Below, piece by piece: positions 14,091 to 37,581 of a DNA stretch of 64,000 nucleotides (position 1 is its first letter; each line of letters begins with the position of its first letter). The notes under the pieces were generated by a model, which was not told the DNA's origin, ran no database searches, and saw only the letters and a program-made list of their open reading frames with translations. A program made the translations under genes and the position numbers. The DNA is taken from positions 194,363 to 258,362 of IMG/VR virus record IMGVR_UViG_3300044701_002789; one strand, written 5' to 3'.

Positions 14091-15572
14091 TCAGTCGGTG
14101 TCAAAGAAAAACATTTGCCATAGTCGTCCATTGTCCATAACTGTCCCAAAGTATTGAGAAGCACTATGAATACAACTTGCATCAAAGATAACCAGACGAT
14201 TATAAACATTTCCTAGAACATCAACAGGTTCAAATGGGGTTCCATCTAAATGACACCCTCCAGGAACATCAATCCACGCATCATTCCATCCTTCCTCATA
14301 ATAAGTTCTTGCTTTTGTTTTCTTGTTAGCGTATAATGTGGTTCCACACTGATATGGTGCATTCGGTGTGAGGTACAACATACCACCCCACTTTTGATCG
14401 TCGCAATGATAAACTAAAGGTTCACCAGACCACGCAACTTGAAATCTCCCATTCATCCCATGTTCTTCCCACTTTGTTATTTTTCTTCCCATGATTTCTT
14501 CAAATTTTTCTTTGAGTCCAGGAAATAAAAATTGTTGATGAGTTCTTCTTCCAATGAATCCCCTACCCAAACCACCTTCAAGATAGTCTTGTTTTAATGC
14601 AAACTCTCTTACTTCATCTGGGTTCTCATAAAAGTTATCTATAATCCAAGAAGTTGATTTGGAGTTAATATTAATATTAAATAGATTTTCTTGTTTAGGA
14701 AGCAAGAAATTTCTTACATTTGGCAAATTGAAGATAATTTGTGGTAACAGATTAACTGGATAATTTTTTTGACTTAGTTTACTAGTTTGTTCTACTTCAA
14801 TAATATCTTTCATAGATTCTGAACTTAAAGTATTAAGGTTGGAAAGATTATCGGATAAAACAGTAGTTTTTGCTTTATATTTTCTTAAAGTTTCATCTCC
14901 CATCCAAGTAAAATGCCACCCACAGTCTTCAATTATTTTTCCATTTTCAGTAATCCAAACCGGATCCAATGGACTACCATATTGTCCCCTGAATTTTGTC
15001 GGAGATCCTCCATTTGATAATTGTCTTTTAGTACACAAAAGAAGAGATTGACTCCAATCTGCCGGCACATCTCCCTCATAAAGTCTTTTATTCGCTTGAC
15101 CTTCTAAAAGAACTAAAGGAACTTTAATGATATTGTTTGGAATATTTCTACAACATGTTGAAAAATATAGAATAAATTCTGGATTGATTATTTCATCACA
15201 ATCACTTACGATAAAAACATCATCATCATCGTATTCATCTATTACAGACATTAGAGCATCTCTTTGTAATCTTTCTCTAGTCCAATTTTTAACTTGAGTT
15301 GATTTTGCTTCTAATGAATAGACATAATCAGATTCATCTGGAATTAAATCTTCACTATCCGGCACAATAGTTTCAATAACCTGAATTTTATCCTTTGGTA
15401 AATTAAGATCTTCTATTAGTTTTTTACAAATAAAATCTTTATCATCTCCATTATGTGTTTTATTTGATTCAGAGATAATAAACTTATCCACATGATCTTT
15501 TAGTAGATTAATTCTAAGTTCTAATAATTCTTTTTCAATGAAAAAAGTAAAATAATCAATAATCTTTTTCAT
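14091..15572 (-). CDS. GT17-like glycosyltransferase fused to a 2OG-Fe(II) oxygenase-like domain
   Basis: N-terminal ELLELRI..FIISES, RE..QR, SDCDEI, GWHFTW; C-terminal IDNFY, HCD, YNRLVIF, HSA, RLWQMFFF. Confidence 0.8.
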   Translation of the reverse strand: MKKIIDYFTFFIEKELLELRINLLKDHVDKFIISESNKTHNGDDKDFICKKLIEDLNLPKDKIQVIETIVPDSEDLIPDESDYVYSLEAKSTQVKNWTRERLQRDALMSVIDEYDDDDVFIVSDCDEIINPEFILYFSTCCRNIPNNIIKVPLVLLEGQANKRLYEGDVPADWSQSLLLCTKRQLSNGGSPTKFRGQYGSPLDPVWITENGKIIEDCGWHFTWMGDETLRKYKAKTTVLSDNLSNLNTLSSESMKDIIEVEQTSKLSQKNYPVNLLPQIIFNLPNVRNFLLPKQENLFNININSKSTSWIIDNFYENPDEVREFALKQDYLEGGLGRGFIGRRTHQQFLFPGLKEKFEEIMGRKITKWEEHGMNGRFQVAWSGEPLVYHCDDQKWGGMLYLTPNAPYQCGTTLYANKKTKARTYYEEGWNDAWIDVPGGCHLDGTPFEPVDVLGNVYNRLVIFDASCIHSASQYFGTVMDNGRLWQMFFFDTD

Positions 15573-16190
15573 TTAATACCACTCTGTAAATTTAATTCTA
15601 TTTTCCGAAAATACTTTTTTGTAATTTTCTATTTTATTTCTATAAACAACTAAATCATCAAAAAAATGTGGATGAAATTCAATGTAAATTTCATTAATGT
15701 ATTTAATTGTGCCAGATGATATTAATTTATCTATAATATCAAATTCGCTTCCTTCAACATCTAATTTTACAACAATAAAATCATTAATACTAGAAAATGT
15801 TTCTATAATATTTGAAAAATCTAATACCCTTACTATCTCTGTTTCTGAATTATATTTAATTGGATTCTCTTGTAATTTTTGTGGGGGATTTAATAATATA
15901 TTAGAAGACTGCCCAGTAAATGTACCAACTTCAGTTCCATCCCAAATAGTAGATTCGGATAGGTTTAAATTTACATAATCATTTTTATTAGATACACCAG
16001 CATTAAAATGAATAATATTCAATCCATCATCTAATAATTTTAAATAATTTTCTTTTGAACTAATATATGTTTTTGGATTTGGTTCAAAACAATAACATTC
16101 CCAACTAGAATCTATACCATAGATTTTAGATATTTCGTTGAACCCCTGAAACAAGTGTGTTCCGCAGTCAAAGAATTTTTTTTTTTTAAA
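15573..16190 (-). CDS. FkbM-family methyltransferase domain, out of frame with the upstream gene at an A12 tract
   Basis: Frame opens FKKKKFFDCGTHLFQG (SAM motif I) with no ATG; FEPNP, KLDVEGSEF, IEFH. Confidence 0.8.
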   Translation of the reverse strand, partial: FKKKKFFDCGTHLFQGFNEISKIYGIDSSWECYCFEPNPKTYISSKENYLKLLDDGLNIIHFNAGVSNKNDYVNLNLSESTIWDGTEVGTFTGQSSNILLNPPQKLQENPIKYNSETEIVRVLDFSNIIETFSSINDFIVVKLDVEGSEFDIIDKLISSGTIKYINEIYIEFHPHFFDDLVVYRNKIENYKKVFSENRIKFTEWY

Positions 16191-17482
16191 TTTTTATTAG
16201 TACTCTGAATTTCATTATTAATATAAACCATAAATTCACAATTATAAGTGTCAATAAAAGTATCATCAAATATTTTATCAGTTATGTCTAGTGATTTTCC
16301 CCAAGAAATATTTTGTCTGGTGCAAGACATTACCTTGTAATCGTTGAACTTAGTTAAATATGTATCTCTGAATTTTTTGAATTTTTCTCTGAAATTATAA
16401 CCTTTGAGGTGAATTTCTATTGATATAAATTTAACATTATTGAATATAAAATCTATATTTTCTTCGGTAAAAATATTATATTCACCACCTTCACAGTCAA
16501 CTTTCATATAATCAATATGATTAATTGAATATGTTGATATAAGTTCTTTAAAAGTAATGGGAATAAAACTCTTATCATTCCCAAAAACATTAATTTCATC
16601 AGTATTATTACTTACTATTCCATTATTAATATAAGTTATTGATGTATTAAAGTTATTGAATAATTTTTCGGAACAGTTTTTAACCAATGTTTTTAGTAAA
16701 TTTTTAGATGGTTCAACACAATATACTTTTTTTGGTTTTTGATCTAAAATTGATATAGTATATGCACCAACACTTGCACCAATATCCAAAACAATATCAT
16801 TTTCTTTTACATCTTTCCAAAATCTATAAACATTTTCATGTATCACTTCTCTTTCTATTGTAACAATGTCTTCTTCCGTTAGGTCTGCCCAATCAAAGTT
16901 GTTTGGATAATTAAATGTTTGACCGATTGAATTTTTTCCTAATCTAATTAAGTTTTGATTTATACTATTTTTGTGTAATTCATCAAAATTATCCCAGTAA
17001 TTTTTTGTAAGAAGATCAAATAGATTTCTACTTTCATCACCTTTACCCCACCACCAAGCTGCAACTGCTTTTTGGAATAACAATAAATGTTTTCCACTAT
17101 ACTCAGGAATGTTAATACTTTCTATTTCATTATTATGACATTGTAGACCAAGATTTGCATAGGTATAACAACTTTGCCATTCTTGGTTCTTTTCATACAA
17201 TAGAGATAAGAAATAATATGCCTCTGGTCTTTGTGGCAATAAGTTTAAGGCATTTTCTAATGTTACTTTTTCAGTATTATCTCTTGAACCTTGTAATTTA
17301 TAACAAAACGCTGATTTTAGTAAACATTCATAAGCAAGTAAATCATTTTTAGATCTTTCCGCAGTTCTTAGATAATAAGTGTGTGCGGGTGCATACTGAC
17401 CTTGTTTTTCATACCATTTCGCGAGATTATAATTATTTTCTGGATTTTCGGTATCTAGTGAAAATTTAATAAGCTCATTCAT
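16112..17482 (-). CDS. TPR domain + FkbM-family methyltransferase
   Basis: TPR-like N-terminus (PQRPEAYYFL); LDIGASVG, VEP, KVDCEGGE, IEIH. Confidence 0.85.
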   Translation of the reverse strand: MNELIKFSLDTENPENNYNLAKWYEKQGQYAPAHTYYLRTAERSKNDLLAYECLLKSAFCYKLQGSRDNTEKVTLENALNLLPQRPEAYYFLSLLYEKNQEWQSCYTYANLGLQCHNNEIESINIPEYSGKHLLLFQKAVAAWWWGKGDESRNLFDLLTKNYWDNFDELHKNSINQNLIRLGKNSIGQTFNYPNNFDWADLTEEDIVTIEREVIHENVYRFWKDVKENDIVLDIGASVGAYTISILDQKPKKVYCVEPSKNLLKTLVKNCSEKLFNNFNTSITYINNGIVSNNTDEINVFGNDKSFIPITFKELISTYSINHIDYMKVDCEGGEYNIFTEENIDFIFNNVKFISIEIHLKGYNFREKFKKFRDTYLTKFNDYKVMSCTRQNISWGKSLDITDKIFDDTFIDTYNCEFMVYINNEIQSTNKNLKKKNSLTAEHTCFRGSTKYLKSMV

Positions 17483-18452
17483 TAATAAAGTCCTCAACTA
17501 CTGATTTTGAAATTCTGAGTATATACGCTGCGTTGTCTTGCGTTCCAAATGTAATTAGAAAATCATCATTATATTCGGCCATGCCACAAGAAAATTCAAT
17601 TTTAAAATTTAAAAATGAAAATAACTTTGATACTTTTTGAAGTTTAAAATTCTTATCCCATATAACAAACCGATGACGATAAGTTGCATCTTTTCTACCT
17701 TGTTCTGAATTATAAAGTTCTGTTTCATGGAGAAGAGAAAGATATCCATTTTGATATGGAATAACTTGTGAACCACCTCTTAAATCATTTTTTAATTCTG
17801 TAGTGTAAGGACTTGTTTCAATTATTGTGGAATCTTTTCCTGTAATATCAAATTTCAATAATGCAGTTGGATTAGTCCATTTTAAAAGATGAAAAGGTTT
17901 ATCTTCAATTGGAGTACAATTTTTCATACAATATTCATCATCTGGTGGAGGACCTGGAATTCTATATCTAGAAACTTCTTTAACTTCAGAACCATTGAAC
18001 CTCAATTCAGAAAGTTCCATTCTTCCAGTTCCAATAGTGTCTACATCTCTGCGTACACCTATAGCGTAAATCTTACCGTTCCATTGAATCAAACGAACAT
18101 CTTCCAACCCAACAAATTCCCATTGTGGTTGATAAGTATCAAAATTTGATGTATCTATTTTTGAGTAATGGAGTATATTTAAATCTTCATCTAATTCTGC
18201 AATATGATTTGCAGTTCTGAGGTGCATATCATTCTCTGGGTGTATGTAGGATAATGGTCCCCACATATGTTCAAATTTATTTAATTCCGAATGATATAAT
18301 GTGTAATTTACATTTCTGATATTGACTAATATTCTTCCATCAACTACTAAAACTGATGGATTTGTGAGAGAAGGTCCACAGAGATCTTCGGGATTTATGA
18401 GAAGTGGTTTAATAATGCCACCATTATCTAATGCAAGTTTTACAAAATTCAT
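17475..18452 (-). CDS. five-bladed beta-propeller glycosidase/phosphorylase-like protein (GH130-like)
   Basis: NPSV, GLEDVRL, KNCTP, LRGGSQ and EFSCG motifs. Confidence 0.7.
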   Translation of the reverse strand: MNFVKLALDNGGIIKPLLINPEDLCGPSLTNPSVLVVDGRILVNIRNVNYTLYHSELNKFEHMWGPLSYIHPENDMHLRTANHIAELDEDLNILHYSKIDTSNFDTYQPQWEFVGLEDVRLIQWNGKIYAIGVRRDVDTIGTGRMELSELRFNGSEVKEVSRYRIPGPPPDDEYCMKNCTPIEDKPFHLLKWTNPTALLKFDITGKDSTIIETSPYTTELKNDLRGGSQVIPYQNGYLSLLHETELYNSEQGRKDATYRHRFVIWDKNFKLQKVSKLFSFLNFKIEFSCGMAEYNDDFLITFGTQDNAAYILRISKSVVEDFINE

Positions 18453-18479: not shown

Positions 18480-18830
18480 TTATTCTGGTTTAATGGGCCA
18501 AATAATTTCTCTAGGAAATTTTGATTGTTGAGGAATATCTAAAAGTAATTGTCTATATTCAGTCCAATTGTCTTTTTCTTCTTGAGTAAAAGAATTCCAA
18601 CGAATAACATTTATTGTATCAATGTAAATTGAAAGATACTTATTTCTTCGGATTCTTTGTTTTTGGCACCATTCCTCATAGGTCATCCATCCATTTTCAT
18701 TCCAAAACCATCCAATTTCTCCGTCGTTTTGTGGAGTAGAAATAAGTTCTTCTGTATCAGTCCAAGATTGGTCGTATAGAATATCTACACATTCTCTTGT
18801 ATTCTTATTAATGACACATATTTTATTCAT
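18480..18830 (-). CDS. tail fibre assembly chaperone-like protein
   Basis: R.RRN..L ... W..YRQ.L.DIPQQ..FP..I.WP.KP; immediately follows a fibre gene. Confidence 0.85.
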   Translation of the reverse strand: MNKICVINKNTRECVDILYDQSWTDTEELISTPQNDGEIGWFWNENGWMTYEEWCQKQRIRRNKYLSIYIDTINVIRWNSFTQEEKDNWTEYRQLLLDIPQQSKFPREIIWPIKPE

Positions 18831-18842
18831 TTATTTTACTCC

Positions 18843-20297
18843 TTATAGTTTTAAATATTCTACTATTAAAATTGTACCCGCAGCTCCGGTTCCACCAACA
18901 ACACCTGTAAGTAAATTTATATTTACTGCACCAGAACCTCCTGCACCGGGTTGTGTTGCGTTTATTCCAGCATTTGAACCTGCAGTAAATCTTACTGGTC
19001 CGTTTGCTCCGCCGCCCCAATATGATGCACCACCGTTCCCCGCAGTAACCGTATTGTTACCCACACCCAAACCGGGCAAACCATCGAGTCCAGTATGAAG
19101 AATGTCACCTCCAGTAGGAATTCCACCATTTCCACCATTAAATGCCGATGTGTTGGCTGCATAAGCACTTCCAGTTCCAAATCCACCTTCTCCACCAGTT
19201 CCGACTAAAACAATGGAATCAATTCCAGTACAGGTAAAAATTGAGTTAGATCCATTTCCACCATTTCCGCCAAGAACAGTACCTGCAGCACCTCCACCTC
19301 CAACAGTATAGGTGGCGGTTGTCCCCAATTGTGCGGCAGTTAACCATTTAATTGATGTTCCTCCTCCTCCTCCGCCTCCAGAGCAACTACCAGATGAACC
19401 ATCGGAGTCGGATCCTCCTCCTCCACCACCTCCACCAGTGACGAATACTTGAGCAATTATTGTTTTTGGATCTCTAGTAAAAGTTCCTGAACCTACTGAA
19501 TTATATCTGGTTATTTTTACTGATGATATTCCTACGCTTCCATCTACTTCCACACTCCCATCCACTTTTACATTTCCAGCAACATGGAGTTTTGAATTTA
19601 ATTGTGGATTCAATGTTCCTATACTAATAGAACCATCTAGAAATAAATTACTTGTACTCGGATTAAAACTGAATGGGGGTGATGTTGTTCTTATACTTGG
19701 CGTCTGATTTCCAGTTCCTGCAACAAACACTGGATAAAATGTCGAATTGGTAGTAGTATCAAATGCTGAAATGACATTAGATGGTCCATTTAATCCTTGA
19801 ATTCCTTGAGATCCTGTAGTTCCTTGAATTGATATTCCCTGAGTTCCTTGAATACCAAAATTACCTTGAATACCTTGAATTCCTTGAGATCCTGTAGTTC
19901 CTTGAATTGATATTCCCTGAGTTCCTTGAATACCAAAATTACCTTGAATACCTTGAATTCCTTGAGATCCTGTAGTTCCTTGAATTGATATTCCCTGAGT
20001 TCCTTGAATACCAAAATTACCTTGAATACCTTGAATTCCTTGAGATCCTGTAGTTCCTTGACGACCTTGAATACCTTGAGTTCCTTGAGATCCTGTAGAT
20101 CCTTGAGTACCTTGAATACCTTGAGTTCCTTGAGATCCTGTAGATCCTTGAGTACCTTGAATACCTTGAGTTCCTTGAGATCCTGTAGTTCCTTGACGAC
20201 CTTGAATACCCTGAGTTCCTTGAGATCCTGTAGATCCTTGAATTCCCTGAGTGCCCCTAAAACTTGAATCTAAAAATGCGGAAAGATTTACTGGCAT
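18843..20297 (-). CDS. collagen-like fibre with C-terminal glycine-rich domain
   Basis: G-X-Q triplets, ISIGT..P...LHV.G module, polyglycine-rich C-terminus. Confidence 0.85.
   Translation of the reverse strand: MPVNLSAFLDSSFRGTQGIQGSTGSQGTQGIQGRQGTTGSQGTQGIQGTQGSTGSQGTQGIQGTQGSTGSQGTQGIQGRQGTTGSQGIQGIQGNFGIQGTQGISIQGTTGSQGIQGIQGNFGIQGTQGISIQGTTGSQGIQGIQGNFGIQGTQGISIQGTTGSQGIQGLNGPSNVISAFDTTTNSTFYPVFVAGTGNQTPSIRTTSPPFSFNPSTSNLFLDGSISIGTLNPQLNSKLHVAGNVKVDGSVEVDGSVGISSVKITRYNSVGSGTFTRDPKTIIAQVFVTGGGGGGGGSDSDGSSGSCSGGGGGGGTSIKWLTAAQLGTTATYTVGGGGAAGTVLGGNGGNGSNSIFTCTGIDSIVLVGTGGEGGFGTGSAYAANTSAFNGGNGGIPTGGDILHTGLDGLPGLGVGNNTVTAGNGGASYWGGGANGPVRFTAGSNAGINATQPGAGGSGAVNINLLTGVVGGTGAAGTILIVEYLKL
19787..20258 (-). 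repeat. collagen-like coding microrepeat
   Basis: 9-bp-periodic CAAGG(A/T)NNN units; three near-exact GIQGIQGNFGIQGTQGISIQGTTGSQ blocks. Confidence 0.9.
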
Positions 20298-20378: not shown

Positions 20379-20738
20379 TTATGTGTATATTTTTATTTCT
20401 TTATAAAGAGAATTATGTGTCTCGTTAATTTCTCTTTTTATTCTTGCTCTTTCATCATTAGTAATATAAACACCTCTCGCAAGTTCTATAAATTTCTCAT
20501 CAAACACTTGAGATTTTTCCATCACTCTTAATTCATCTTCAATTTTCCAGAGTTTACGATTGATTGTAAGTAATTTTGAAACATAAGATGCATCATAAAC
20601 CTTATGTTCTTGTGCAATTTGAATAAGTTCTTGAAGTTCCTTCTTTACATATTCATTAGAAGTGTGTTGTGACTTAATGGAAAGTATAGAAATTTTATCT
20701 AAAAGTTCACCGACTGATACTGGAATTTCAATTCTCAT
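20379..20738 (-). CDS. DUF6165-like protein
   Basis: IPVSVGELLDKISIL.IK, N..LW.IED..R, F.ELAR.VY..ND.R..IK..IN; family usually sits beside glycosyltransferases. Confidence 0.8.
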   Translation of the reverse strand: MRIEIPVSVGELLDKISILSIKSQHTSNEYVKKELQELIQIAQEHKVYDASYVSKLLTINRKLWKIEDELRVMEKSQVFDEKFIELARGVYITNDERARIKREINETHNSLYKEIKIYT

Positions 20739-22284: not shown

Positions 22285-22979
22285 AAGTATTTTTTCCAAT
22301 CAATACAAGGTGATAAGAGGTCTGCTTCGCAATGTGTAGAATAACCAGGAATGGAAGATATTAATACTCTTCCATTTTGTGATAGTTCTATAAATTTTGA
22401 ATGGTCTGTTGATGGTTCTACATCTGTTGAATGTTTGATATGAGTATCAAAATCATTCATTAAAGTTGAATATTCAACCGCAAAAGTATTTGTAGTTGAA
22501 GGGGTCGCCATCCAATGAGATGAGTTGGTATGAAGAACCTTGGTTCTAAAATCTCTGTAGAACTCCATGTATTTATCTCTATGGTCATATAGGGTTACAT
22601 AATCTGCATAAAGTTCAAAACCCTCTAAAAGAATTTTATCCCAACCTGGACGATGAATATAGTCATCTTCTAAAAAGTAAATGATTTCTCCTTTACGATG
22701 AACAGTATTTTTAACAAGATTTAGAGTTTCAATAAAACTCTTTGCTTCTCCACCAGAGTTAATAATATGAACTTTTTCTTCTTGGGATAAAAAGGTGTCT
22801 TCAATCTTACCGTAATATTCATCATACACAATAGTGTAATTGGTGGTTTCTGGATTTAAAGTGTTCTTAAAATTTTGAAAAACCTTTTCTTTACTCCACC
22901 ACTTTGGTCTTTGTTTTCCGGGAGTTTCTTGTATTTTAGACTGATAACAGTGTCTTAAATAAACATTAATTTTTTTCAT
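22281..22979 (-). CDS. GT-A fold glycosyltransferase-like protein
   Basis: YFLEDDYIH motif; IPGYSTH. Confidence 0.75.
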   Translation of the reverse strand: MKKINVYLRHCYQSKIQETPGKQRPKWWSKEKVFQNFKNTLNPETTNYTIVYDEYYGKIEDTFLSQEEKVHIINSGGEAKSFIETLNLVKNTVHRKGEIIYFLEDDYIHRPGWDKILLEGFELYADYVTLYDHRDKYMEFYRDFRTKVLHTNSSHWMATPSTTNTFAVEYSTLMNDFDTHIKHSTDVEPSTDHSKFIELSQNGRVLISSIPGYSTHCEADLLSPCIDWKKYL

Positions 22980-24548: not shown

Positions 24549-24556
24549 AGTTGTTT

Positions 24557-25763: not shown

Positions 25764-26117
25764 TTACTCTACAAATATTACTGAAGTATTCATCTTATCA
25801 CCCCAATTTTGAAGATACTTTTTAACATCAGGGTTCATCTTCATATTATTTATTGCAAGTGCCTTTAAGTATTGTCCGTTCTCATTATTTTCCACAGAAA
25901 CCAGTACATCACACTTATCAGGTCTCATTTCTTCAGGAAGTAGATGTTGAGACCATGCACACTGATAATTTCTACAAACCTCTGGTCGTGCCTTATGAAC
26001 TCCACAACCTCCCTCTTCAAGAAACTTACATGACTTTCCGCATCCAAAGTTCCAACCAAATGCATCACCAACCAACCAAGAACAACACGCAGTGCATTCT
26101 CCACATTCACGAAACAT
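25764..26117 (-). CDS. YkgJ-like cysteine-cluster (Zn/Fe-S) protein
   Basis: CGECTACC, CKFL, C.VH..RP.VC..Y.C. Confidence 0.85.
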   Translation of the reverse strand: MFRECGECTACCSWLVGDAFGWNFGCGKSCKFLEEGGCGVHKARPEVCRNYQCAWSQHLLPEEMRPDKCDVLVSVENNENGQYLKALAINNMKMNPDVKKYLQNWGDKMNTSVIFVE

Positions 26118-32411: not shown

Positions 32412-33593
32412 TTATGAGAGTGGAAGGTCTGCTGGGATACCTGCGGTGACTGCTGCTGTGTTAGAAATCTGTTTCCAGTTAGTTCCACCAGCAAATGTAG
32501 TGACTGGAGTACTTCTATCAGTATTATTTGCATTTCCGAGTTTTCCACTAACTCCAGAGCCCCAAATCCACAAGGTTCCATCAGTCTTAATTGCTGTTAT
32601 GTAATTAACTCCACAACTAACTTGTTTCCAATTAGTCCCCCCAGCAAATGTAGTGACTGGAGTACTTCTATCAGTATTATTTGCATTTCCAAGTTGTCCA
32701 GAAGTCCCAGTACCCCAAGTCCACAAGGTTCCATCAGTCTTAATTGCTGTTGTGTGATAAAATCCACAACTTACTTGTTTCCAATTAGTCCCCCCAGCAA
32801 ATGTAGTGACTGGAGTACTTCTATCAGTATTATTTGCATTTCCAAGTTGTCCAGCATACCCATAACCCCAAGTCCAAAGAGTTCCATCGGTTTTGACTGC
32901 TGCTGTATGACTATATCCACAACTCACTTGTTTCCAGTTCGTCCCTCCGGCAAATGTGGTGACCGGAGTACTCGTGTTTCCAGTAACTATCCCGTTTCCA
33001 AGTTCTCCAAAAGACTCACTACCCCAAAGCCAAAGAGTTCCATCGGTTTTGATTGCTGCTGTACAATAACCTACAGAACTCACTTGTTTCCAGTTCGTCC
33101 CCCCGGCAAAAGTGGTAATGGGGGTGCTTCTATTTGTAGCATTTGCATTTCCAAGTTGTCCAGAATACCCACGACCCCAGGTCCAAAGAGTTCCATCTGT
33201 TTTAATTGCTGTTGTGTGATAACTTCCAAATCCCGAACTCACTTGTTTCCAGTTGGTTCCTCCTGCAAATGTGGTAACCGGGGTACTTCTTACTGTATAA
33301 CCTGCATTTCCAAGTTGTCCACTATCTCCACTACCCCAAGTCCAAAGCGTACCATCAGTTTTAATTGCTGTTGTGTGAACACTTCCAGCACTCACTTGTT
33401 TCCAATTAGTCCCCCCAGCAAATGTAGTGAGGGGGGTACTAAAGTTTCCAGTAGTTGCTCCATTTCCAAGTCTTCCATTATCACCATAACCCCAAGTCCA
33501 AAGTTCATCACCAATATATTGGTCAATTAACCAATATTCACTCACATAATAATTCTCAATGTCTCCTTCTGGGGATAAGAACTGATTAGGCAT
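32412..33593 (-). CDS. RCC1/BLIP-II repeat beta-propeller, 7 repeats
   Basis: Seven units; start overlaps the fibre gene stop by 8 bp. Confidence 0.92.
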   Translation of the reverse strand: MPNQFLSPEGDIENYYVSEYWLIDQYIGDELWTWGYGDNGRLGNGATTGNFSTPLTTFAGGTNWKQVSAGSVHTTAIKTDGTLWTWGSGDSGQLGNAGYTVRSTPVTTFAGGTNWKQVSSGFGSYHTTAIKTDGTLWTWGRGYSGQLGNANATNRSTPITTFAGGTNWKQVSSVGYCTAAIKTDGTLWLWGSESFGELGNGIVTGNTSTPVTTFAGGTNWKQVSCGYSHTAAVKTDGTLWTWGYGYAGQLGNANNTDRSTPVTTFAGGTNWKQVSCGFYHTTAIKTDGTLWTWGTGTSGQLGNANNTDRSTPVTTFAGGTNWKQVSCGVNYITAIKTDGTLWIWGSGVSGKLGNANNTDRSTPVTTFAGGTNWKQISNTAAVTAGIPADLPLS

Positions 33594-36500
33594 TTATCTT
33601 ATCCTCCAATTCTTCAATGCGAATTTGTTGTTCCTTAATTGCTTCAATTAATACTGCAACAATGTTTCCGTAAGAAACTGTTTTCAATCCTTTTGCATTT
33701 GTAGTTACAACTTCAGGTAATACCTTTTCAATTTCTTGTGCAATCACACCGATAGATGATTTATTATGTCCATCAATCCAATCATAATAAACACCATCAA
33801 TTCGTTTTACCAATTCCACTGCATTCTCAATGGGTCTTATATTTTCTTTCTGGGTTTGGTCAGATAGTGATGTGAATACAGTTGCATAAAGAGTTCCAGT
33901 GCTTGGTTGGAATTCTAATTTATTGTCTGATGCATATGTTGCGGTAGGTGTTCCGGTTGCAACATCCGAGAATGTTGGGAAGAAAATGTTTGAAGATGCA
34001 GTTTCGTTAGTGATGCTACCACTTCCACCGGAGGTTCCTTGAATACCTTGAATTGAAGTTCCTTGAGTACCTTGAATACCTGTGGTTCCTTGAATACCTT
34101 GTGTTCCTTGAGATCCTGTGGTTCCTTGGCGACCCTGTATACCTTGAGTACCTTGAGATCCTGTGATACCTTGTGTTCCTTGAGATCCTGAACCTGTAAT
34201 TCCTTGAGTACCTTGAATACCTTGGATACCTTGTGATCCTGTGATACCTTGTGTTCCTTGAGATCCTGAACCTGTAATTCCTTGGCGACCTTGAATACCT
34301 TGTGATCCCGTGGTTCCCTGGATACCTTGTGTTCCTTGTGATCCCGTGGTTCCCTGGATACCTTGTGTTCCTTGAGATCCTGTAGTTCCTTGAATACCTT
34401 GTGTTCCTTGAGATCCTGTGGTTCCTTGGATACCTTGTGTTCCTTGAGATCCTGTGGTTCCTTGGCGACCCTGTATACCTTGAGTACCTTGAGATCCTGT
34501 GGTTCCTTGGATACCTTGAGTTCCTTGAGAACCAGTAGTTCCTTGAATACCTTGAGTTCCTTGAGATCCTGTGGTTCCTTGGAGACCCTGTATACCTTGA
34601 GTTCCTCCAGATGACCAACTTACTCCAATTCCAGTAGAAATTAATATCGAACCTGCAGTACCTACCTGATTATTACTATCATAAAGACCATTGCGAATTC
34701 TAATATTTCCAACTATATCTAATTTTTGTGATGGATTGGTAGTTCCCAAACCAATGTTCCCATCAAAAGGTGCAAGTTGTATAGTTCCATTTGCATCCAC
34801 ATCAATACTTGGAATACCGGAAACATCGTTAACACTAAAGATAGAACCACTTGTAAGATTATTTGTAATGCTGAATAATTGTCCAGCAGACGCTTCAAAT
34901 GATAGTGTCCCAGAATTGAGAGTATCATAATGAATAATATCAATAATAGTTCCAATACCAACTGTACCAATACCAGATGATGGTCCACTATAAGTTAAAC
35001 TTGTACTTCCAGTTGGGTTATTAGATGCATCTTTATAAACAATTTGATTTGCAGAACCAGCAACAGGACCTGTTATTCCTTGAATACCTTGAGTTCCTTG
35101 AGATCCTGTGGTTCCCTGAATACCTTGAGTTCCTTGAGATCCTGTGGTTCCCTGAATACCTTGAGTACCTTGAGATCCTGTGGTTCCTTGAGATCCTGTG
35201 GTTCCCTGAATACCTTGAGTACCTTGAGAACCAGTGGTTCCTTGAATACCTTGAGTTCCTTGAGATCCTGTGGTTCCTTGACGACCTTGAATACCTTGAG
35301 AACCAGTGGTTCCTTGAATACCTTGAGTTCCTTGAGATCCTGTGGTTCCCTGAATACCTTGAGTACCTTGAGATCCTGTGGTTCCCTGGATACCTTGAGT
35401 TCCTTGAGATCCTGTGGTTCCTTGAATTCCTTGAGTACCTTGAGATCCTGTGGTTCCTTGAGATCCTGTGGTTCCCTGAATACCTTGTGTTCCCTGGATA
35501 CCTTGTGTTCCTTGAGAACCTGTGGTTCCCTGAGAACCTGTGGTTCCTTGAATTCCTTGAGTACCTTGAGATCCTGTGGTTCCTTGAGATCCTGTGGTTC
35601 CCTGGATACCTTGTGTTCCTTGAGAACCAGTTGTTCCTTGACGACCTTGAATACCTTGAGATCCTGTGGTTCCTTGAATTCCTTGTGTTCCCTGGATACC
35701 TTGTGTTCCTTGAGATCCTGTGGTTCCCTGAGAACCTGTGGTTCCTTGAATTCCTTGAGTACCTTGAGATCCTGTGGTTCCCTGGATACCTTGTGTTCCT
35801 TGAGATCCTGTGGTTCCCTGGATACCTTGTGTTCCTTGAGATCCTGTGGTTCCTTGACGACCTTGAATACCTTGAGAACCTGTGGTTCCTTGAATACCTT
35901 GAGTTCCTTGAGATCCTGTGGTTCCCTGAATACCTTGAGTACCTTGAGATCCTGTGGTTCCTTGGATACCCTGAACACCTTGCAGTGCAGCACTTTGAAT
36001 AGTATCTTTCTTTAACTGACCATCAGTTACATCATAGAATAAAATAAAATCATTACTTGCTGCGGCAGTTTGAGTTCTATCATTAATTAATCCAGGATTT
36101 GCACTTCTAATATTGGAAATTGTTACTCCAGTACCTAAAGTAGTAGAAGATAAAACCTCAGTACCCCCAATTTCATATACTTTTCCAACTTCAAGATTAA
36201 CATTATCACTAAATTTTAATGCGGAATTAGTGTTATCCCAGGTAATTGTTTTTCTTATATTTGTAGAACCAATACCAATTCCTGCACCATCAAGGAGTAT
36301 ATTTGTTCCAATAGTAGATGCAACTCCAATTTGATAATCTGCAAGTTCAATAGTTGTAGAATTTACTTGTGTAGTTGTTCCGTCAACATACAAATCACCT
36401 TTAATTCTTACAAGTCCAGTATTATCTCCTATTGTAGTTGGGTCAATAATAAGTTCAGTTGGACCATTAATTTGATTTACATACAGTGATGTTCCATCAA

Positions 36501-37581
36501 AAGTTAAATTTGGAGAACCAGTTGGATTATTTGAACCATCTTTATATACTACTTGATTTGCAGAACCAGCAACAGGACCTGTTGTTCCTTGAATTCCTTG
36601 AGTACCTTGAGATCCTGTGGTTCCTTGAATTCCTTGAGTACCTTGAGATCCTGTGGTTCCTTGAGATCCTGTGGTTCCTTGGATTCCTTGAGTTCCTTGA
36701 GATCCTGTGGTTCCCTGGATACCTTGAGTTCCTTGAGATCCTGTGGTTCCTTGACGACCTTGAATACCTTGAGATCCTGTGGTTCCTTGACGACCTTGAA
36801 TACCTTGAGATCCTGTGGTTCCTTGAATACCTTGTGTTCCTTGAGATCCTGTGGTTCCCTGAGAACCTGTGGTTCCCTGAATACCTTGAGTTCCTTGAGA
36901 ACCTGTGGTTCCCTGAATACCTTGAGTTCCTTGAGATCCTGTGGTTCCCTGGATACCTTGAGTTCCTTGAGATCCTGTGGTTCCCTGGATACCTTGAGTA
37001 CCTTGAGTACCTTGAGTACCTTGAGATCCTGTAGTTCCTTGAGATCCTGTGGTTCCTTGAATACCTTGTGTTCCTTGAGATCCTGTGGTTCCTTGAGAAC
37101 CTGTGGTTCCCTGAATACCTTGAGTTCCTTGAGATCCTGTGGTTCCTTGAATACCTTGAGTACCTTGAGTACCTTGAGAACCTGTGGTTCCTTGACGACC
37201 TTGAATACCTTGAGAACCTGTGGTTCCCTGGATACCTTGAGTACCTTGAGTACCTTGAGATCCTGTAGTTCCTTGGATTCCTTGAGTACCTTGTGATCCT
37301 GTGGTTCCTTGAACTCCTTGCAATGCAGCAGTTGATATTGATTCCCACTTAATACCAGAACCAGTGGATAATAGAACTGATGTTGCAGCACCCACTTGAT
37401 CAAAACTATCATAAATTCCACCACGAATTCTTACATCTCCCGCAACATCTAATTCTTGTGTTGCATTCGTGGTTCCAATACCAACCTTACCAGTAACCTC
37501 AAGTACTATTTGATTTTCAGTATAAGAAGTAATACCGATTCTGAGATTTCTTTGACGATTACTAATATATCCTTTAGGCAT
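33586..37581 (-). CDS. long collagen-like tail fibre with C-terminal peptidase S74 intramolecular chaperone
   Basis: Three G-X-Y blocks, VGIGT modules, C-terminal SD...K.NI, GVIAQE, VSY, LIEAIKE. Confidence 0.9.
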   Translation of the reverse strand: MPKGYISNRQRNLRIGITSYTENQIVLEVTGKVGIGTTNATQELDVAGDVRIRGGIYDSFDQVGAATSVLLSTGSGIKWESISTAALQGVQGTTGSQGTQGIQGTTGSQGTQGTQGIQGTTGSQGIQGRQGTTGSQGTQGTQGIQGTTGSQGTQGIQGTTGSQGTTGSQGTQGIQGTTGSQGTTGSQGTQGTQGTQGIQGTTGSQGTQGIQGTTGSQGTQGIQGTTGSQGTQGIQGTTGSQGTTGSQGTQGIQGTTGSQGIQGRQGTTGSQGIQGRQGTTGSQGTQGIQGTTGSQGTQGIQGTTGSQGTTGSQGTQGIQGTTGSQGTQGIQGTTGPVAGSANQVVYKDGSNNPTGSPNLTFDGTSLYVNQINGPTELIIDPTTIGDNTGLVRIKGDLYVDGTTTQVNSTTIELADYQIGVASTIGTNILLDGAGIGIGSTNIRKTITWDNTNSALKFSDNVNLEVGKVYEIGGTEVLSSTTLGTGVTISNIRSANPGLINDRTQTAAASNDFILFYDVTDGQLKKDTIQSAALQGVQGIQGTTGSQGTQGIQGTTGSQGTQGIQGTTGSQGIQGRQGTTGSQGTQGIQGTTGSQGTQGIQGTTGSQGTQGIQGTTGSQGTTGSQGTQGIQGTQGIQGTTGSQGIQGRQGTTGSQGTQGIQGTTGSQGTTGSQGTQGIQGTTGSQGTTGSQGTQGIQGTQGIQGTTGSQGTTGSQGTQGIQGTTGSQGTQGIQGTTGSQGTQGIQGTTGSQGTQGIQGTTGSQGIQGRQGTTGSQGTQGIQGTTGSQGTQGIQGTTGSQGTTGSQGTQGIQGTTGSQGTQGIQGTTGSQGTQGIQGITGPVAGSANQIVYKDASNNPTGSTSLTYSGPSSGIGTVGIGTIIDIIHYDTLNSGTLSFEASAGQLFSITNNLTSGSIFSVNDVSGIPSIDVDANGTIQLAPFDGNIGLGTTNPSQKLDIVGNIRIRNGLYDSNNQVGTAGSILISTGIGVSWSSGGTQGIQGLQGTTGSQGTQGIQGTTGSQGTQGIQGTTGSQGTQGIQGRQGTTGSQGTQGIQGTTGSQGTQGIQGTTGSQGTQGIQGTTGSQGTQGIQGTTGSQGIQGRQGITGSGSQGTQGITGSQGIQGIQGTQGITGSGSQGTQGITGSQGTQGIQGRQGTTGSQGTQGIQGTTGIQGTQGTSIQGIQGTSGGSGSITNETASSNIFFPTFSDVATGTPTATYASDNKLEFQPSTGTLYATVFTSLSDQTQKENIRPIENAVELVKRIDGVYYDWIDGHNKSSIGVIAQEIEKVLPEVVTTNAKGLKTVSYGNIVAVLIEAIKEQQIRIEELEDKINA
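34030..37321 (-). repeat. three collagen-like coding repeat blocks (~34030-34606, ~35066-35982, ~36575-37321)
   Basis: GTT-GSQ-GTQ-GIQ-GRQ triplets with near-identical codons. Confidence 0.9.

What the first reader, a model, noticed from the sequence alone, without database searches (positions are those of the whole stretch)
14091..37581. Candidate virion-fibre glycan decoration system: modifying enzymes interleaved with Thr/Ser collagen fibres and propellers
Seen: about 20 co-oriented genes, many with 4-20 bp overlaps. In transcription order: S74 collagen fibre, RCC1, DUF4376-like, RCC1, TPR-GT9, 2OG oxygenase, two GT-like genes, Cys-cluster protein, RCC1, sulfotransferase, two GT-A, MTase-GT2-TPR, DUF6165, collagen fibre, chaperone, GH130-like, TPR-FkbM(-FkbM), GT17-2OG. 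Late-promoter-like (C/A)TAAATA elements lie in the gaps (~32410, 29340, 20375, 18477), and no nucleotide-sugar synthesis genes are present. Known: TPR-fused GT2/GT9, FkbM and YkgJ-like genes are typical of protein (e.g. flagellin) glycosylation loci, and some viruses glycosylate virion proteins. Inference: a late-expressed pathway that glycosylates, then O-methylates, sulfates and hydroxylates, the hundreds of Thr/Ser residues in the fibres. This could alter adsorption, stability or shielding.
Basis: partly seen in the sequence, partly recalled or inferred. Interest (0 to 1): 0.85.

Follow-up and report, generated by a model that had tools for sequence, protein, structure and literature searches.

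The report
Sugar-modifying enzymes inside cyanophage tail-fibre genes
A freshwater cyanobacterial virus carries about a dozen sugar-adding, methylating and sulfating enzyme genes among its tail-fibre genes, and they most likely decorate the fibres, which would be an unusually elaborate case of a bacterial virus glycosylating its own particle; this is predicted, not shown.

Summary
These include the hard ones: TPR plus a GT9-like GT-B fold, a GH130-like protein, and MTase-GT2-TPR.

The window is the end of a 258-kb freshwater T4-like cyanomyovirus. Its nearest isolate is Synechococcus phage S-SRM01.

New findings:
- A 14-gene core (three RCC1 propellers plus the enzymes) is syntenic in S-SRM01 and about 55 viral contigs, down to about 50% identity. 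It almost always follows a tail fibre with an S74 end.
- The late-promoter-like motifs are conserved across these loci.
- The GT2-TPR unit resembles the peptide and protein glycosyltransferases SunS, ThuS and GmaR. Its methyltransferase domain resembles sugar O-methyltransferases.
- TPR-GT9 has the layout of the flagellin glycosyltransferase FlmG.
- No protein has a membrane segment.

Against the collagen-specific reading:
- 7 of 19 distinct locus types have no collagen fibre. They have other Ser/Thr-rich repeats instead.
- The collagen repeats lack Lys and almost lack Pro.
- Most S74 fibres in phages have no such module.

Verdict: fibre or propeller O-glycan decoration is the best explanation (about 0.5) but is unproven. 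I class it as a new variant of phage virion glycosylation.

The parts
33586..37581 (-). Tail fibre, 1331 aa. It has three blocks of Pro/Lys-poor collagen repeats (735 residues of GXY; X is mostly T/S/I and Y mostly Q/T) and a C-terminal Peptidase_S74 intramolecular chaperone.
   Evidence: Pfam Collagen E 4.7e-110 and Peptidase_S74 E 7e-14. Translation. Repeat composition.
32412..33593 (-). RCC1-like seven-bladed beta-propeller (RCC1a, 393 aa, 25% Ser+Thr), probably a virion protein.
   Evidence: WD40_RLD E 8e-114. Conserved directly after the S74 fibre in related loci. An RCC1/ATS1-domain protein was found in phage GAP32 virions by mass spectrometry (PMC5259590).
31718..32395 (-). DUF4376 protein (225 aa), weakly similar to tail-fibre proteins. 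It is preceded by a conserved late-promoter-like motif at 32409-32415.
   Evidence: DUF4376 E 1.6e-5, 25.7 bits against a cut-off of 25. Weak hits to PHROG tail-fibre families. The motif is conserved in 23 of 23 distinct upstream sequences.
29343..31721 (-). Double RCC1-like propeller (RCC1b, 792 aa).
   Evidence: WD40_RLD E 3.7e-162, with 14 RCC1 repeats.
27975..29315 (-). N-terminal TPR domain (about residues 1-175) fused to a compact GT-B glycosyltransferase domain (186-446) of GT9-like fold. A late-promoter-like motif lies at 29340-29346.
   Evidence: AlphaFold model, pLDDT 85.6. Structural matches: 3tov GT9 Z 17.1, TibC Z 15.7, WaaF 15.7, WaaC 15.6. Profile hits to TPR proteins. Motif conserved in 27 of 29 distinct upstream sequences.
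27533..27991 (-). Small 2OG-Fe(II) oxygenase (152 aa) with HxE...H and RxS motifs.
   Evidence: 2OG-FeII_Oxy_5 E 2e-12. Sequence. 84% identical to its S-SRM01 homologue.
26757..27536 (-). Unclassified GT-A-like protein (259 aa).
   Evidence: No Pfam family. Atlas relatives have models similar to GT8, GT77, DUF1647 and RgpF folds, TM 0.66-0.68.
26107..26760 (-). DUF8361-like protein with a GT-A-like fold (217 aa).
   Evidence: Atlas feature score 0.98 to DUF8361 clusters. The same fold is fused to GT17 in giant viruses and to GT34 in phages.
25764..26117 (-). Cys-rich protein (117 aa, 10 Cys) with a CxxCxxCC motif at residues 5-12. It is probably metal-binding; its role is unknown.
   Evidence: Pfam CxxCxxCC E 0.0028, below the cut-off. 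phrog_9155 E 2.8e-20. Sequence.
24557..25747 (-). RCC1-like propeller (RCC1c, 396 aa), placed among the enzyme genes.
   Evidence: WD40_RLD E 3.6e-72. The position is conserved in related loci.
23766..24623 (-). PAPS-type sulfotransferase. The true start is probably Met26, at 24548.
   Evidence: Sulfotransfer_3 E 1.9e-14 and Sulfotransfer_1 E 1.8e-10. The best PDB sequence hits are protein-tyrosine sulfotransferases, E 2.5e-5, over residues 28-98 only. Homologues align from residue 26 onward.
22966..23769 (-). GT2 glycosyltransferase (GT2a). It is an accessory member, present in about half of the locus types.
   Evidence: Glycos_transf_2 E 3.5e-5. Presence/absence matrix.
22281..23024 (-). Conserved core protein (GT2b) with a sub-threshold match to GT2.
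   Evidence: Glycos_transf_2 E 0.024, below the cut-off. 59-79% identical across loci.
20728..22299 (-). Three-domain enzyme: a sugar-O-methyltransferase-like domain (1-195), a GT-A/GT2 domain (199-367) and a TPR-like helical domain (371-517). The likely ATG start is at 22284.
   Evidence: Methyltransf_24 E 8e-24 and GT2 E 2.8e-9. PDB sequence hits: GmaR 2e-7, SunS 1e-5. Model pLDDT 82.7. Structural matches: SunS Z 19.8, ThuS Z 18.8, MeT1 Z 19.5, SpnH 17.2, MycF 17.1.
20379..20738 (-). DUF6165 protein (119 aa), the last gene of the conserved core. Its function is unknown.
   Evidence: DUF6165 E 1.1e-11. Conserved across loci.
18843..20297 (-). Second fibre (484 aa): a collagen stalk with a Gly-rich C-terminal domain. 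It occurs only in near-identical contigs. A late-promoter-like motif lies at 20376-20382.
   Evidence: Collagen E 6.9e-9 and Gly_rich_2 E 4.6e-6. Hits to PHROG tail-fibre families. Present only in L002-L004.
18480..18830 (-). Tail-fibre assembly chaperone.
   Evidence: Phage_tail_APC E 2.3e-11. Hits to PHROG tail-fibre assembly families.
17475..18452 (-). GH130/BMT-like beta-propeller enzyme, either a glycoside phosphorylase or a mannosyltransferase type. A late-promoter-like motif lies at 18477-18483.
   Evidence: Pfam GH130 E 0.04 only. Atlas score 0.94-0.95 to GH130, DUF1861 and BMT clusters. The fold is fused to FkbM, GT2 and TPR in phages and giant viruses. It recurs after the last fibre gene in other contigs and between collagen-like and tail-fibre genes in phage DSL-LC02.
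16112..17497 (-). TPR domain (about residues 13-129) fused to an FkbM methyltransferase.
   Evidence: Methyltransf_21 E 6.9e-9 plus TPR hits. Sequence hits to TPR proteins in the PDB.
15573..16154 (-). Stand-alone FkbM-family methyltransferase.
   Evidence: Methyltransf_21 E 8.4e-11. TIGR01444 E 2.9e-14, above its cut-off.
14091..15572 (-). GT17-like glycosyltransferase domain (residues 2-147) fused to a DUF6445 domain that carries an HxD...H arrangement and is probably oxygenase-like. This is the last gene before the DNA-metabolism genes.
   Evidence: Glyco_transf_17 E 2.7e-11 and DUF6445 E 1.8e-6. Sequence. The DUF6445 domain is 70-87% conserved in many viral contigs, with varying N-terminal fusions. 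Downstream genes are a helicase and a homing endonuclease.

Best explanation
The region is the distal tail-fibre block of a freshwater T4-like cyanomyovirus (Kyanoviridae, near Serangoonvirus S-SRM01). Two accessory enzyme cassettes are embedded in it.

Cassette 1 (20379-33593) is a conserved 14-gene core: three RCC1 propellers, a DUF4376 protein, a TPR-GT-B (GT9-like) enzyme, a small 2OG oxygenase, two unclassified GT-A-like proteins, a CxxCxxCC protein, a sulfotransferase, one or two GT2 enzymes, a sugar-O-MTase-GT2-TPR enzyme, and DUF6165.

Cassette 2 (14091-18452) holds a GH130-like enzyme, TPR-FkbM, FkbM, and GT17-DUF6445.

Proposed mechanism:
1. The enzymes are made late, together with the fibres. 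They are soluble and cytoplasmic.
2. The TPR domains recruit a protein acceptor. The acceptor is most likely the Ser/Thr-rich repeat shaft of the S74-terminated fibres, the RCC1 propellers, or both.
3. A SunS/GmaR-like GT2-TPR enzyme and an FlmG-like TPR-GT-B enzyme start O-linked glycans.
4. The other GT domains extend the glycans.
5. The TylF-type and FkbM methyltransferases O-methylate sugars, and the sulfotransferase adds sulfate from host PAPS.
6. Nucleotide sugars come from the host, and perhaps from the phage's one dehydratase/epimerase-like gene elsewhere in the genome.

Shown here: gene content, folds, synteny, motif conservation and the absence of membrane segments. Inferred: late timing, a protein acceptor, the order of reactions, and the chemistry of the glycan. 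The role of the two oxygenase-like domains is left open.
For: 1. Linkage to fibres.
- The core is syntenic in S-SRM01 at 45-84% amino-acid identity and in about 55 IMG/VR loci down to about 50%.
- 41 of 45 loci with enough upstream sequence have an S74 fibre end about 3.1 kb before the TPR-GT gene, that is, directly before RCC1a.
- More Ser/Thr-rich fibre-like ORFs follow the core.
- Cassette 2 recurs directly after the last fibre gene in other contigs. In phage DSL-LC02 it sits between a collagen-like protein and tail-fibre genes.
- A 28%-identical GT9-like homologue in phage BUCT-ZZ01 follows a tail fibre and a BNR propeller.

2. Late-promoter-like motifs.
- (A/C)TAAATA lies 13-31 nt upstream of starts, as it does for baseplate and fibre genes in the window.
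- It is conserved in 27 of 29 (TPR-GT) and 23 of 23 (DUF4376) distinct upstream sequences.
- Genome-wide, 52 of 115 sites lie within 40 nt upstream of a start.

3. Features that point to a protein acceptor.
- Three enzymes have TPR domains.
- The GT2-TPR unit is closest to GmaR and SunS by sequence. By fold it is closest to SunS and ThuS (Z 19.8 and 18.8, against about 14 for other GT2 enzymes).
- TPR-GT-B has the architecture of FlmG, whose TPR domain binds flagellin (PMC7591256), and of OGT and SPY.
- Its fold matches the protein heptosyltransferase TibC.

4. Sugar-tailoring enzymes. The methyltransferase domain is closest to the sugar O-methyltransferases MeT1, SpnH and MycF.

5. No membrane machinery. 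None of the 21 proteins has a membrane segment, and no initiating phosphotransferase, flippase or polymerase-like protein is present.

6. Acceptors are always at hand. The upstream fibres are 20-34% Ser+Thr and carry tandem repeats, whether collagen-type or other.

7. Precedents. Mycobacteriophage capsid and tail-tube proteins are glycosylated (Freeman 2023, as summarised in PMC12619734). A bacterial hydroxylation-sulfation system for collagen-like and tail-collar proteins has been predicted (PMC2938197).
Against: - There are no expression or virion chemistry data, and no RNA run was listed.
- The late-like motif is not exclusive to structural genes. There are 52 such sites genome-wide, including some near the second glycan cluster.
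- The GT9-like fold matches the LPS heptosyltransferases WaaC and WaaF as well as it matches TibC. No Pfam GT9 hit was obtained.
- The similarity to tyrosine sulfotransferases covers only the PAPS-binding region.
- The module is independent of collagen repeats: 7 of 19 locus types have none.
- S74-terminated fibres occur in 699 phage records, but the module is found only in S-SRM01. Such fibres therefore do not need it.
- The cyanophage literature assigns such genes to modification of the host cell surface (PMC12801897).
- The phage encodes no PAPS, ADP-heptose or sugar-nucleotidyltransferase genes.
Confidence: 0.5

Rival explanations
1. Remodelling of the host envelope. The enzymes alter host LPS, O-antigen, exopolysaccharide or S-layer glycans during infection, for example to block superinfection or to stop progeny sticking to cell debris. 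On this view their position next to the fibre genes reflects only the hypervariable, insertion-tolerant nature of that region.
For: - This is the standard reading of cyanophage glycosyltransferase clusters (PMC12801897).
- The GT9-like fold equals that of the LPS heptosyltransferases WaaC and WaaF.
- GT2, GT17, FkbM and sulfotransferase families are common in polysaccharide pathways.
- The same genome has a second cluster of LPS type: GT25, GT11, an SLH protein and a dehydratase-like gene.
- S-SRM01 has an epimerase directly after its DUF6165 gene.
Against: - There is no membrane protein, initiating phosphoglycosyltransferase, flippase, polymerase or ligase among the 21 proteins.
- The region holds no nucleotide-sugar genes.
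- Three enzymes carry TPR protein-binding domains, and the GT2-TPR unit is closest to protein and peptide glycosyltransferases.
- Gene order within the fibre genes is strictly conserved over about 50% sequence divergence, with conserved late-like promoters. Late synthesis leaves little time for envelope remodelling.
Confidence: 0.25
2. The RCC1 propellers are the real functional partners. Either they are the only glycosylated products, or they act as lectin-like subunits that bind a glycan made by the enzymes. The long fibres would then be bystanders.
For: - Three RCC1 genes are interleaved with the enzymes and belong to the invariant core, while the upstream fibre type varies.
- The RCC1 proteins are 24-25% Ser+Thr.
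- An RCC1/ATS1 protein was found in GAP32 virions (PMC5259590).
- In BUCT-ZZ01 another propeller, of BNR type, sits beside the GT9-like gene.
Against: - No feature shows that the propellers attach to the virion or that they are modified.
- Cassette 2 recurs next to fibres with no RCC1 gene nearby.
- This overlaps with the best explanation rather than excluding it.
Confidence: 0.15
3. A soluble product. The cassette would make a free or peptide-linked glycoconjugate of secondary-metabolite or RiPP type, or would modify phage DNA with glycans.
For: - The closest structural relatives of the GT2-TPR unit are SunS and ThuS, which are RiPP (glycocin) enzymes.
- Tandem dioxygenase clusters in cyanophages have been proposed to make metabolites (PMC2938197).
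- Phage glycosyltransferases can hypermodify DNA (cited in PMC12619734).
Against: - No precursor-peptide, transporter or protease genes were seen. The Cys-rich protein is a conserved member of the CxxCxxCC family.
- The genome has no thymidylate-synthase or dCMP-hydroxymethylase family gene, so a route via hydroxymethyl-pyrimidine DNA is unsupported.
- The late-type promoter motifs and the position within the fibre genes do not fit DNA modification enzymes, which are made early in T4 (established knowledge).
Confidence: 0.07

Closest known systems
Mycobacteriophage virion glycosylation (Freeman et al. 2023, Cell Host Microbe; not held in the library, cited through PMC12619734 and PMC12801897)
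   Same: Phage-encoded glycosyltransferase genes lie next to structural genes. The predicted acceptors are virion proteins, modified in the cytoplasm before assembly.
   Different: - That system has one to a few glycosyltransferases and modifies the C-termini of the capsid and tail-tube proteins. It is shown experimentally.
- Here there are about 8 GT domains, 3 methyltransferases, a sulfotransferase and 2 oxygenase-like domains.
- They sit in the tail-fibre block of a T4-like cyanophage, with RCC1 propellers among them.
- Nothing here is shown experimentally.
Cytoplasmic flagellin O-glycosyltransferases with TPR domains: FlmG of Caulobacter (PMC7591256) and GmaR of Listeria (PDB 22ao)
   Same: - FlmG and the 446-aa protein share an N-terminal TPR followed by a GT-B domain.
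- GmaR is the best PDB sequence match to the GT2 domain of the 523-aa protein (E 2e-7).
- Both modify Ser/Thr of a repetitive structural filament protein before export or assembly.
   Different: - No homology to FlmG was tested.
- The GT-B domain is GT9-like in fold, not Maf- or FlmG-like.
- The acceptor would be a phage fibre, not flagellin.
- The donor sugars are unknown.
Glycocin S-glycosyltransferases SunS and ThuS (GT2 plus TPR; PDB 7msp, 7msk)
   Same: They are the best structural matches to residues 176-508 of the 523-aa protein (Z 19.8 and 18.8, up to 300 residues aligned). The architecture is the same: a GT-A domain followed by a helical peptide-binding domain.
   Different: - The NCBIfam SunS equivalog scores 32 bits against a cut-off of 350, so the protein is not a SunS orthologue.
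- No precursor peptide is present.
- The protein has an extra N-terminal sugar-O-methyltransferase domain.
- Related loci add or drop domains.
Autotransporter heptosyltransferases TibC/AAH and the LPS heptosyltransferases WaaC/WaaF (CAZy GT9)
   Same: The GT-B fold of residues 186-446 matches them at Z 15.6-17.1. TibC O-glycosylates Ser residues in a repetitive beta-helical adhesin, a close functional analogy to a repeat-rich fibre.
   Different: - No Pfam GT9 match was found.
- The domain is shorter, about 260 aa.
- It is fused to a TPR domain.
- No ADP-heptose pathway gene (GmhA) is in the phage.
- Fold alone cannot separate a protein acceptor from an LPS acceptor.
Giant-virus glycan machineries (Mimivirus fibril glycosylation clusters; chlorovirus A064R, a GT-GT-methyltransferase) and glycosylated collagen-like proteins such as Bacillus BclA and Mimivirus L230 (own knowledge, not tested here)
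   Same: - These are virus-encoded, multi-enzyme, cytoplasmic glycosylations of surface fibres, including fusions of GT and methyltransferase domains.
- The GH130-like and DUF8361 folds of this region are also found fused to GT2, TPR and GT17 in Nucleocytoviricota.
   Different: - Those viruses infect eukaryotes and encode their own nucleotide-sugar pathways.
- L230 hydroxylates and glucosylates Lys of collagen, but the repeats here contain no Lys.
Predicted bacterial hydroxylation-sulfation systems for collagen-like and phage tail-collar proteins (Iyer et al. 2010, PMC2938197)
   Same: Genes for a 2OG dioxygenase, a sulfotransferase and a collagen-like or tail-fibre-type protein are co-located. 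The structural protein is proposed as the substrate.
   Different: - Those are bacterial operons with beta-hydroxylase or phytanoyl-CoA-hydroxylase families and PAPS synthetases.
- Here the oxygenase families differ (2OG-FeII_Oxy_5 and DUF6445), glycosyltransferases dominate, and no PAPS genes are present.

Membership tests
CAZy GT9 / Pfam Glyco_transf_9 (heptosyltransferases) | GT-B fold superimposable on GT9 structures | tested here: met
   Residues 186-446 match 3tov (Z 17.1), TibC (15.7), WaaF (15.7) and WaaC (15.6), with 229-242 residues aligned.
CAZy GT9 / Pfam Glyco_transf_9 (heptosyltransferases) | Sequence match to the family profile | tested here: not met
   No Glyco_transf_9 hit in Pfam even at E up to 5; only weak TPR hits. 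A profile search of PDB sequences found TPR proteins only.
CAZy GT9 / Pfam Glyco_transf_9 (heptosyltransferases) | ADP-heptose donor | not testable with these tools
   No GmhA (SIS_2) gene in the phage. The donor is unknown.
TPR-fused protein O-glycosyltransferases (FlmG, OGT/SPY type) | N-terminal TPR domain followed by a C-terminal GT-B catalytic domain in one soluble protein | tested here: met
   Model m43a15b812a7d has helical repeats at 3-173 and a GT-B domain at 186-446. Whole-model Foldseek hits are SPY and OGT, though with low TM (0.26-0.34). FlmG architecture from PMC7591256.
TPR-fused protein O-glycosyltransferases (FlmG, OGT/SPY type) | The TPR domain binds the protein acceptor, and Ser/Thr is glycosylated | not testable with these tools
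   This needs binding and transfer assays.
SunS/ThuS glycocin glycosyltransferases | GT-A (GT2) domain followed by a TPR-like helical domain, structurally superimposable | tested here: met
   SunS Z 19.8 (300 residues aligned) and ThuS Z 18.8, above other GT2 enzymes at about 14. Sequence E 1e-5.
SunS/ThuS glycocin glycosyltransferases | Equivalog-level sequence membership, and a cognate precursor peptide | tested here: not met
   TIGR04195 scores 32.4 bits against a cut-off of 350. No precursor-like small gene was recognised in the region.
Phage virion glycosylation system (mycobacteriophage type) | Glycosyltransferase genes embedded among virion structural genes | tested here: met
   The enzymes lie between fibre genes, and the arrangement is conserved in about 55 loci and S-SRM01.
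Phage virion glycosylation system (mycobacteriophage type) | Glycan demonstrated on a virion protein | not testable with these tools
   No proteomic data. S-SRM01 is in culture and could be tested.
Collagen prolyl/lysyl hydroxylation (animal and Mimivirus L230 type) | Pro or Lys in the X/Y positions of the GXY repeats, as substrate | tested here: not met
   The 245 GXY triplets of the long fibre hold 2 Pro and 0 Lys. The second fibre has none of either.
T4-type late transcription unit | A TATAAATA-like -10 element shortly upstream of the gene | tested here: met
   Motifs at 32415, 29346, 18483 and 20382. Conserved in 27 of 29 and 23 of 23 orthologous upstream sequences.
T4-type late transcription unit | Transcripts appear late in infection | not testable with these tools
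   No RNA run was listed for the stretch.
O-antigen / LPS / EPS biosynthesis gene cluster | A membrane-bound initiating transferase, flippase or ABC transporter, polymerase or ligase, and nucleotide-sugar genes within the cluster | tested here: not met
   The highest 19-residue hydropathy among the 21 proteins is 1.54, so none has a membrane segment. None of these families appears in Pfam scans of the region.
PAPS-dependent sulfotransferase | Profile match above the cut-off, and a 5'-phosphosulfate-binding loop | tested here: met
   Sulfotransfer_3 scores 54.9 bits (cut-off 27) and Sulfotransfer_1 41.1 bits (cut-off 22). The loop LPRSGST lies at residues 35-41.

The most novel reading that the evidence does not exclude
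A T4-like cyanophage lineage builds complex O-methylated and sulfated O-glycans on its own tail fibres and on RCC1-propeller receptor-binding proteins. It would do so with a dedicated, late-expressed, TPR-guided enzyme set of about 12 proteins. This would be the first glycosylated tail fibre in a T4-like phage and the first sulfated glycoprotein in any phage particle. The glycan coat would tune adsorption, host range or resistance to proteases and grazers in fresh water.
Probability: 0.3. Interest if true: 0.8.

Novelty: new variant of a known kind. Interest (0 to 1): 0.62.

Why it matters
Tail fibres decide which cells a phage can infect. If these fibres or propellers carry phage-made glycans, host recognition in abundant freshwater cyanophages would depend on a post-translational layer that sequence-based host-range prediction cannot see.

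It would also extend phage virion glycosylation from mycobacteriophage capsids to the adsorption apparatus of T4-like phages. It would add sulfation and sugar methylation to the known chemistry. It would link phage biology to the fibre-glycosylation machineries of giant viruses, which share several of the unusual folds found here.

The cassette also challenges the default annotation of cyanophage glycosyltransferases as genes that modify the host cell wall. The question can be tested directly, because S-SRM01, which carries the core cassette, is in culture with its host.

Tried and rejected
- Expression evidence. No RNA run was listed for 27900-33600. A second query of kind 'any' returned only DNA metagenomes, mostly freshwater.
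- Cellular context of the TPR-GT family. A profile search found 27,043 representative proteins, many of them giant multi-module bacterial proteins. The two contexts I examined gave no clue to the acceptor, so I dropped this line.
- Context of the distant sulfotransferase homologue in siphovirus S-SKS1. Its neighbours are mostly hypothetical and nucleotide-metabolism genes, which gives no support either way.
- PDB sequence searches. There was no hit for GT17-DUF6445. The small 2OG oxygenase and GT2a gave only insignificant hits.
- DNA glycosylation. Rejected, because the genome has no ThyA or dCMP-hydroxymethylase family gene and because of the late-type motifs.
- Collagen-specific targeting. 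Rejected as an obligatory link. Presence of GT2a tracks collagen only weakly (8/1 against 4/6 locus types, Fisher p = 0.057), and that count is confounded by relatedness.
- Contrast in promoter motifs between this cassette and the second glycan cluster. Not clear-cut, because late-like motifs also occur near that cluster.
I rebuilt the alignment without that row.

Full report
**Origin of the window**

The window is the last 64 kb of a 258,362-bp viral contig, IMGVR_UViG_3300047564_003571. The contig is found almost entirely in freshwater and lake metagenomes. GC content is 27-44% and nearly all genes lie on the minus strand.

The flanking genes are T4-like baseplate, fibre and virion proteins. 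The nearest isolate is the freshwater Synechococcus phage S-SRM01 (Kyanoviridae, Serangoonvirus).

**Check of the observation**

They are tightly packed, with spacings of -67 to +81 nt. Most are short overlaps, and the largest overlaps come from taking upstream TTG starts.

Pfam confirms these families:
- Collagen plus Peptidase_S74.
- Three RCC1 propeller proteins, one of them a double propeller.
- DUF4376, 2OG-FeII_Oxy_5, sulfotransferase and GT2.
- Methyltransf_24 plus GT2, and DUF6165.
- Collagen plus a Gly-rich domain, and Phage_tail_APC.
- TPR plus FkbM, a second FkbM, and GT17 plus DUF6445.

- A model of the 446-aa protein (pLDDT 85.6) has an N-terminal TPR domain and a C-terminal GT-B domain. 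The best structural matches of that domain are GT9 enzymes: 3tov Z 17.1, TibC 15.7, WaaF 15.7, WaaC 15.6.
- The 259-aa and 217-aa proteins resemble GT-A folds; the second is DUF8361-like.
- The 325-aa protein is GH130/BMT-like.
- The 523-aa protein has three domains: methyltransferase, GT-A, and a TPR-like helical domain.

The collagen repeats are unusual. In 245 triplets of the long fibre, X is T, S or I and Y is Q or T. There are 2 Pro and no Lys. The two fibres hold 362 and 108 Ser+Thr residues.

**Promoter-like motifs**

(A/C)TAAATA occurs on the minus strand at 32415, 29346, 20382 and 18483. The first, second and fourth lie 14-25 nt upstream of a start codon, and the third lies 79 nt upstream. 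The same motif lies at 13-31 nt before the window's baseplate, fibre and virion genes. Genome-wide, 52 of 115 sites lie within 40 nt upstream of a same-strand start.

The motif is conserved in the orthologous position in 27 of 29 distinct sequences upstream of the TPR-GT gene. It is conserved in 23 of 23 upstream of the DUF4376 gene, although the flanking bases have diverged.

This supports real promoters of the T4 late type. Timing itself is inferred. The motif is also not restricted to structural genes.

**Comparative anatomy**

A search of viral contigs with the TPR-GT protein returned 60 loci. A presence matrix and gene maps show a conserved core with this order:

S74-terminated fibre, RCC1a, DUF4376, RCC1b, TPR-GT, 2OG, (an extra 227-aa gene absent here), GT-A-like, DUF8361, CxxCxxCC, RCC1c, sulfotransferase, (GT2a), GT2b, (MT-)GT2-TPR, DUF6165.

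- This order holds in S-SRM01 at 45-84% identity and in contigs down to about 50% identity.
- 41 of 45 loci with at least 4.5 kb of upstream sequence have an S74 fibre end about 3.1 kb before the TPR-GT gene.
- Further Ser/Thr-rich fibre-like ORFs follow the core.
- The second collagen fibre and its chaperone occur only in near-identical contigs.

A second cassette is more widely distributed. It holds the GH130-like protein, (TPR-)FkbM, and a protein ending in DUF6445. It sits directly after the last fibre gene and before the same SprT-like gene that bounds the region here. In the freshwater phage DSL-LC02, GH130-like plus two FkbM genes lie between a collagen-like protein and tail-fibre genes. 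A distant GT9-like homologue in phage BUCT-ZZ01 follows a tail fibre and a BNR propeller.

The multi-domain enzymes are modular. The GT2-TPR unit occurs in four forms: alone, with the N-terminal methyltransferase, with an extra C-terminal domain, or with both.

**Test of the collagen link**

Among 19 distinct locus types with enough flank, 12 have a collagen-repeat ORF upstream and 7 have none, S-SRM01 included. The collagen-free fibres carry other Ser/Thr-rich tandem repeats.

A third collagen/S74 fibre lies 22 kb away, at 59367-64000, and is not next to the enzymes. S74-type fibre ends occur in 699 phage records, whereas the TPR-GT occurs only in S-SRM01, with one distant relative. S-CAM7 has no enzymes after its S74 fibre.

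The cassette is therefore an accessory of one lineage. It is tied to Ser/Thr-rich repeat fibres and RCC1 propellers, not to collagen as such.

**What the enzymes look like**

- By sequence, the GT2 domain of the 523-aa protein is closest to GmaR, the Listeria flagellin O-GlcNAc transferase (E 2e-7), and to SunS (1e-5).
- By structure, the GT2-TPR unit matches SunS and ThuS at Z 19.8 and 18.8. That is clearly above wall-teichoic-acid and other GT2 enzymes, at about 14.
- Its methyltransferase domain matches the sugar O-methyltransferases MeT1, SpnH and MycF.
- The TPR-GT-B protein has the layout of FlmG, whose TPR domain binds flagellin (PMC7591256), and of OGT and SPY.
- The best PDB sequence hits of the sulfotransferase are protein-tyrosine sulfotransferases, but only over the PAPS-binding region.
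- The small oxygenase has HxE...H and RxS motifs, and the DUF6445 domain has HxD...H.
- None of the 21 proteins has a membrane segment.

The phage lacks genes for a sugar nucleotidyltransferase, APS kinase and GmhA. It has one dehydratase/epimerase-like gene, in a separate LPS-type cluster 140 kb away. That cluster holds GT25, GT2, GT11, a GT47-like gene, two methyltransferases and an SLH-domain protein.

**Interpretation**

The best-supported reading is a late, cytoplasmic, TPR-guided pathway that O-glycosylates virion fibre and/or propeller proteins, then methylates and sulfates the glycans. It would draw its donors from the host.

The linkage, the motif conservation, the folds and the lack of membrane machinery are shown here. 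The acceptor, the timing and the chemistry are inferred. I put this at about 0.5.

The rivals are:
- Remodelling of host surface glycans, the usual reading in the cyanophage literature (PMC12801897). I put it at about 0.25.
- RCC1-centred variants of the main idea.
- A soluble glycoconjugate, or DNA modification. These are unlikely. The genome has no hydroxymethylase-family gene.

**Comparison with known systems**

- Virion glycosylation by phage-encoded glycosyltransferases is established for mycobacteriophage capsid and tail-tube proteins (Freeman 2023, cited in PMC12619734).
- Giant viruses glycosylate their fibrils with their own enzyme clusters (own knowledge).
- A hydroxylation-sulfation system for bacterial collagen-like and tail-collar proteins was predicted in 2010 (PMC2938197).
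- The paper describing S-SRM01 lists only a few HHpred glycosyltransferase hits and does not discuss the cassette (PMC8557907).

I found no report of glycosylated cyanophage virions.

This is therefore a new and much more elaborate variant of a known kind, predicted but not demonstrated. Because S-SRM01 is in culture, the prediction can be tested directly.

Noticed in passing
window 59367-64000 (minus strand), continuing at genome 68-1534: A third collagen-repeat fibre ORF with an S74-like C-terminal end runs off the end of the contig. The contig's 114-bp 'direct terminal repeat' lies inside this collagen-repeat coding sequence (it reads TQGTQGTQGTTGSQ...). The DTR-based 'complete genome' call may therefore be an assembly overlap within a tandem-repeat gene.
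   Followed up: partly
outside the window: genome 45664-53578 (locus L064:1664-9578): A second, separate glycan cluster of LPS type. It holds an SLH-domain protein, GT25, GT2, GT11, DUF5672, a GT47/RXYLT1-like gene, two methyltransferases and a GDP-mannose-4,6-dehydratase/epimerase-like gene.
   Followed up: partly
window 20728-22299 and its homologues in L005-L059: Domain shuffling. The GT2-TPR unit occurs alone (about 320 aa), with an N-terminal methyltransferase (about 520 aa), with an extra C-terminal domain of about 190 aa (about 510 aa), or with both (about 710 aa).
   Followed up: partly
loci L001, L026, L044, L056 and others, between the 2OG and GT-A-like genes: Most related loci carry an extra 226-228-aa gene between the 2OG oxygenase and the 259-aa GT-A-like gene. 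This gene is missing from the window.
   Followed up: no
window 27975-29315; proteins P0122-P0270: The TPR-GT domain family is very large: 27,043 representative proteins, 966 of them at E <= 1e-30. It includes giant bacterial proteins of 1,300-3,100 aa with 3-10 copies of the domain, all apparently uncharacterised.
   Followed up: partly
window 14091-14840; loci L084-L150: The DUF6445 (HxD...H) domain is 70-87% identical across many viral contigs, while its N-terminal fusion partner varies: GT17, proteins of 613-1071 aa, or none.
   Followed up: partly
window 22966-23769: Presence of the accessory GT2a gene weakly tracks the presence of a collagen-repeat fibre upstream: 8/1 against 4/6 distinct locus types, Fisher p = 0.057, not corrected for relatedness.
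   Followed up: partly
window 43257-45832: Three tandem paralogous genes (252, 261 and 240 aa) match the same PHROG families, phrog_24074 and the virion structural protein family phrog_8510. Two of the three are preceded directly by a late-like motif, and a further motif precedes a small ORF (44017-44271) lying just upstream of the third.
   Followed up: no
window 11546-13427: Immediately beyond the cluster lie a NUMOD3 homing-endonuclease-like gene and a ResIII/DEAD helicase. They mark the switch from structural genes to DNA-metabolism genes.
   Followed up: no
window 52721-58783: A 2020-aa ORF in the baseplate/fibre block is preceded by a late-like motif at 58820. It was not characterised further.
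   Followed up: no
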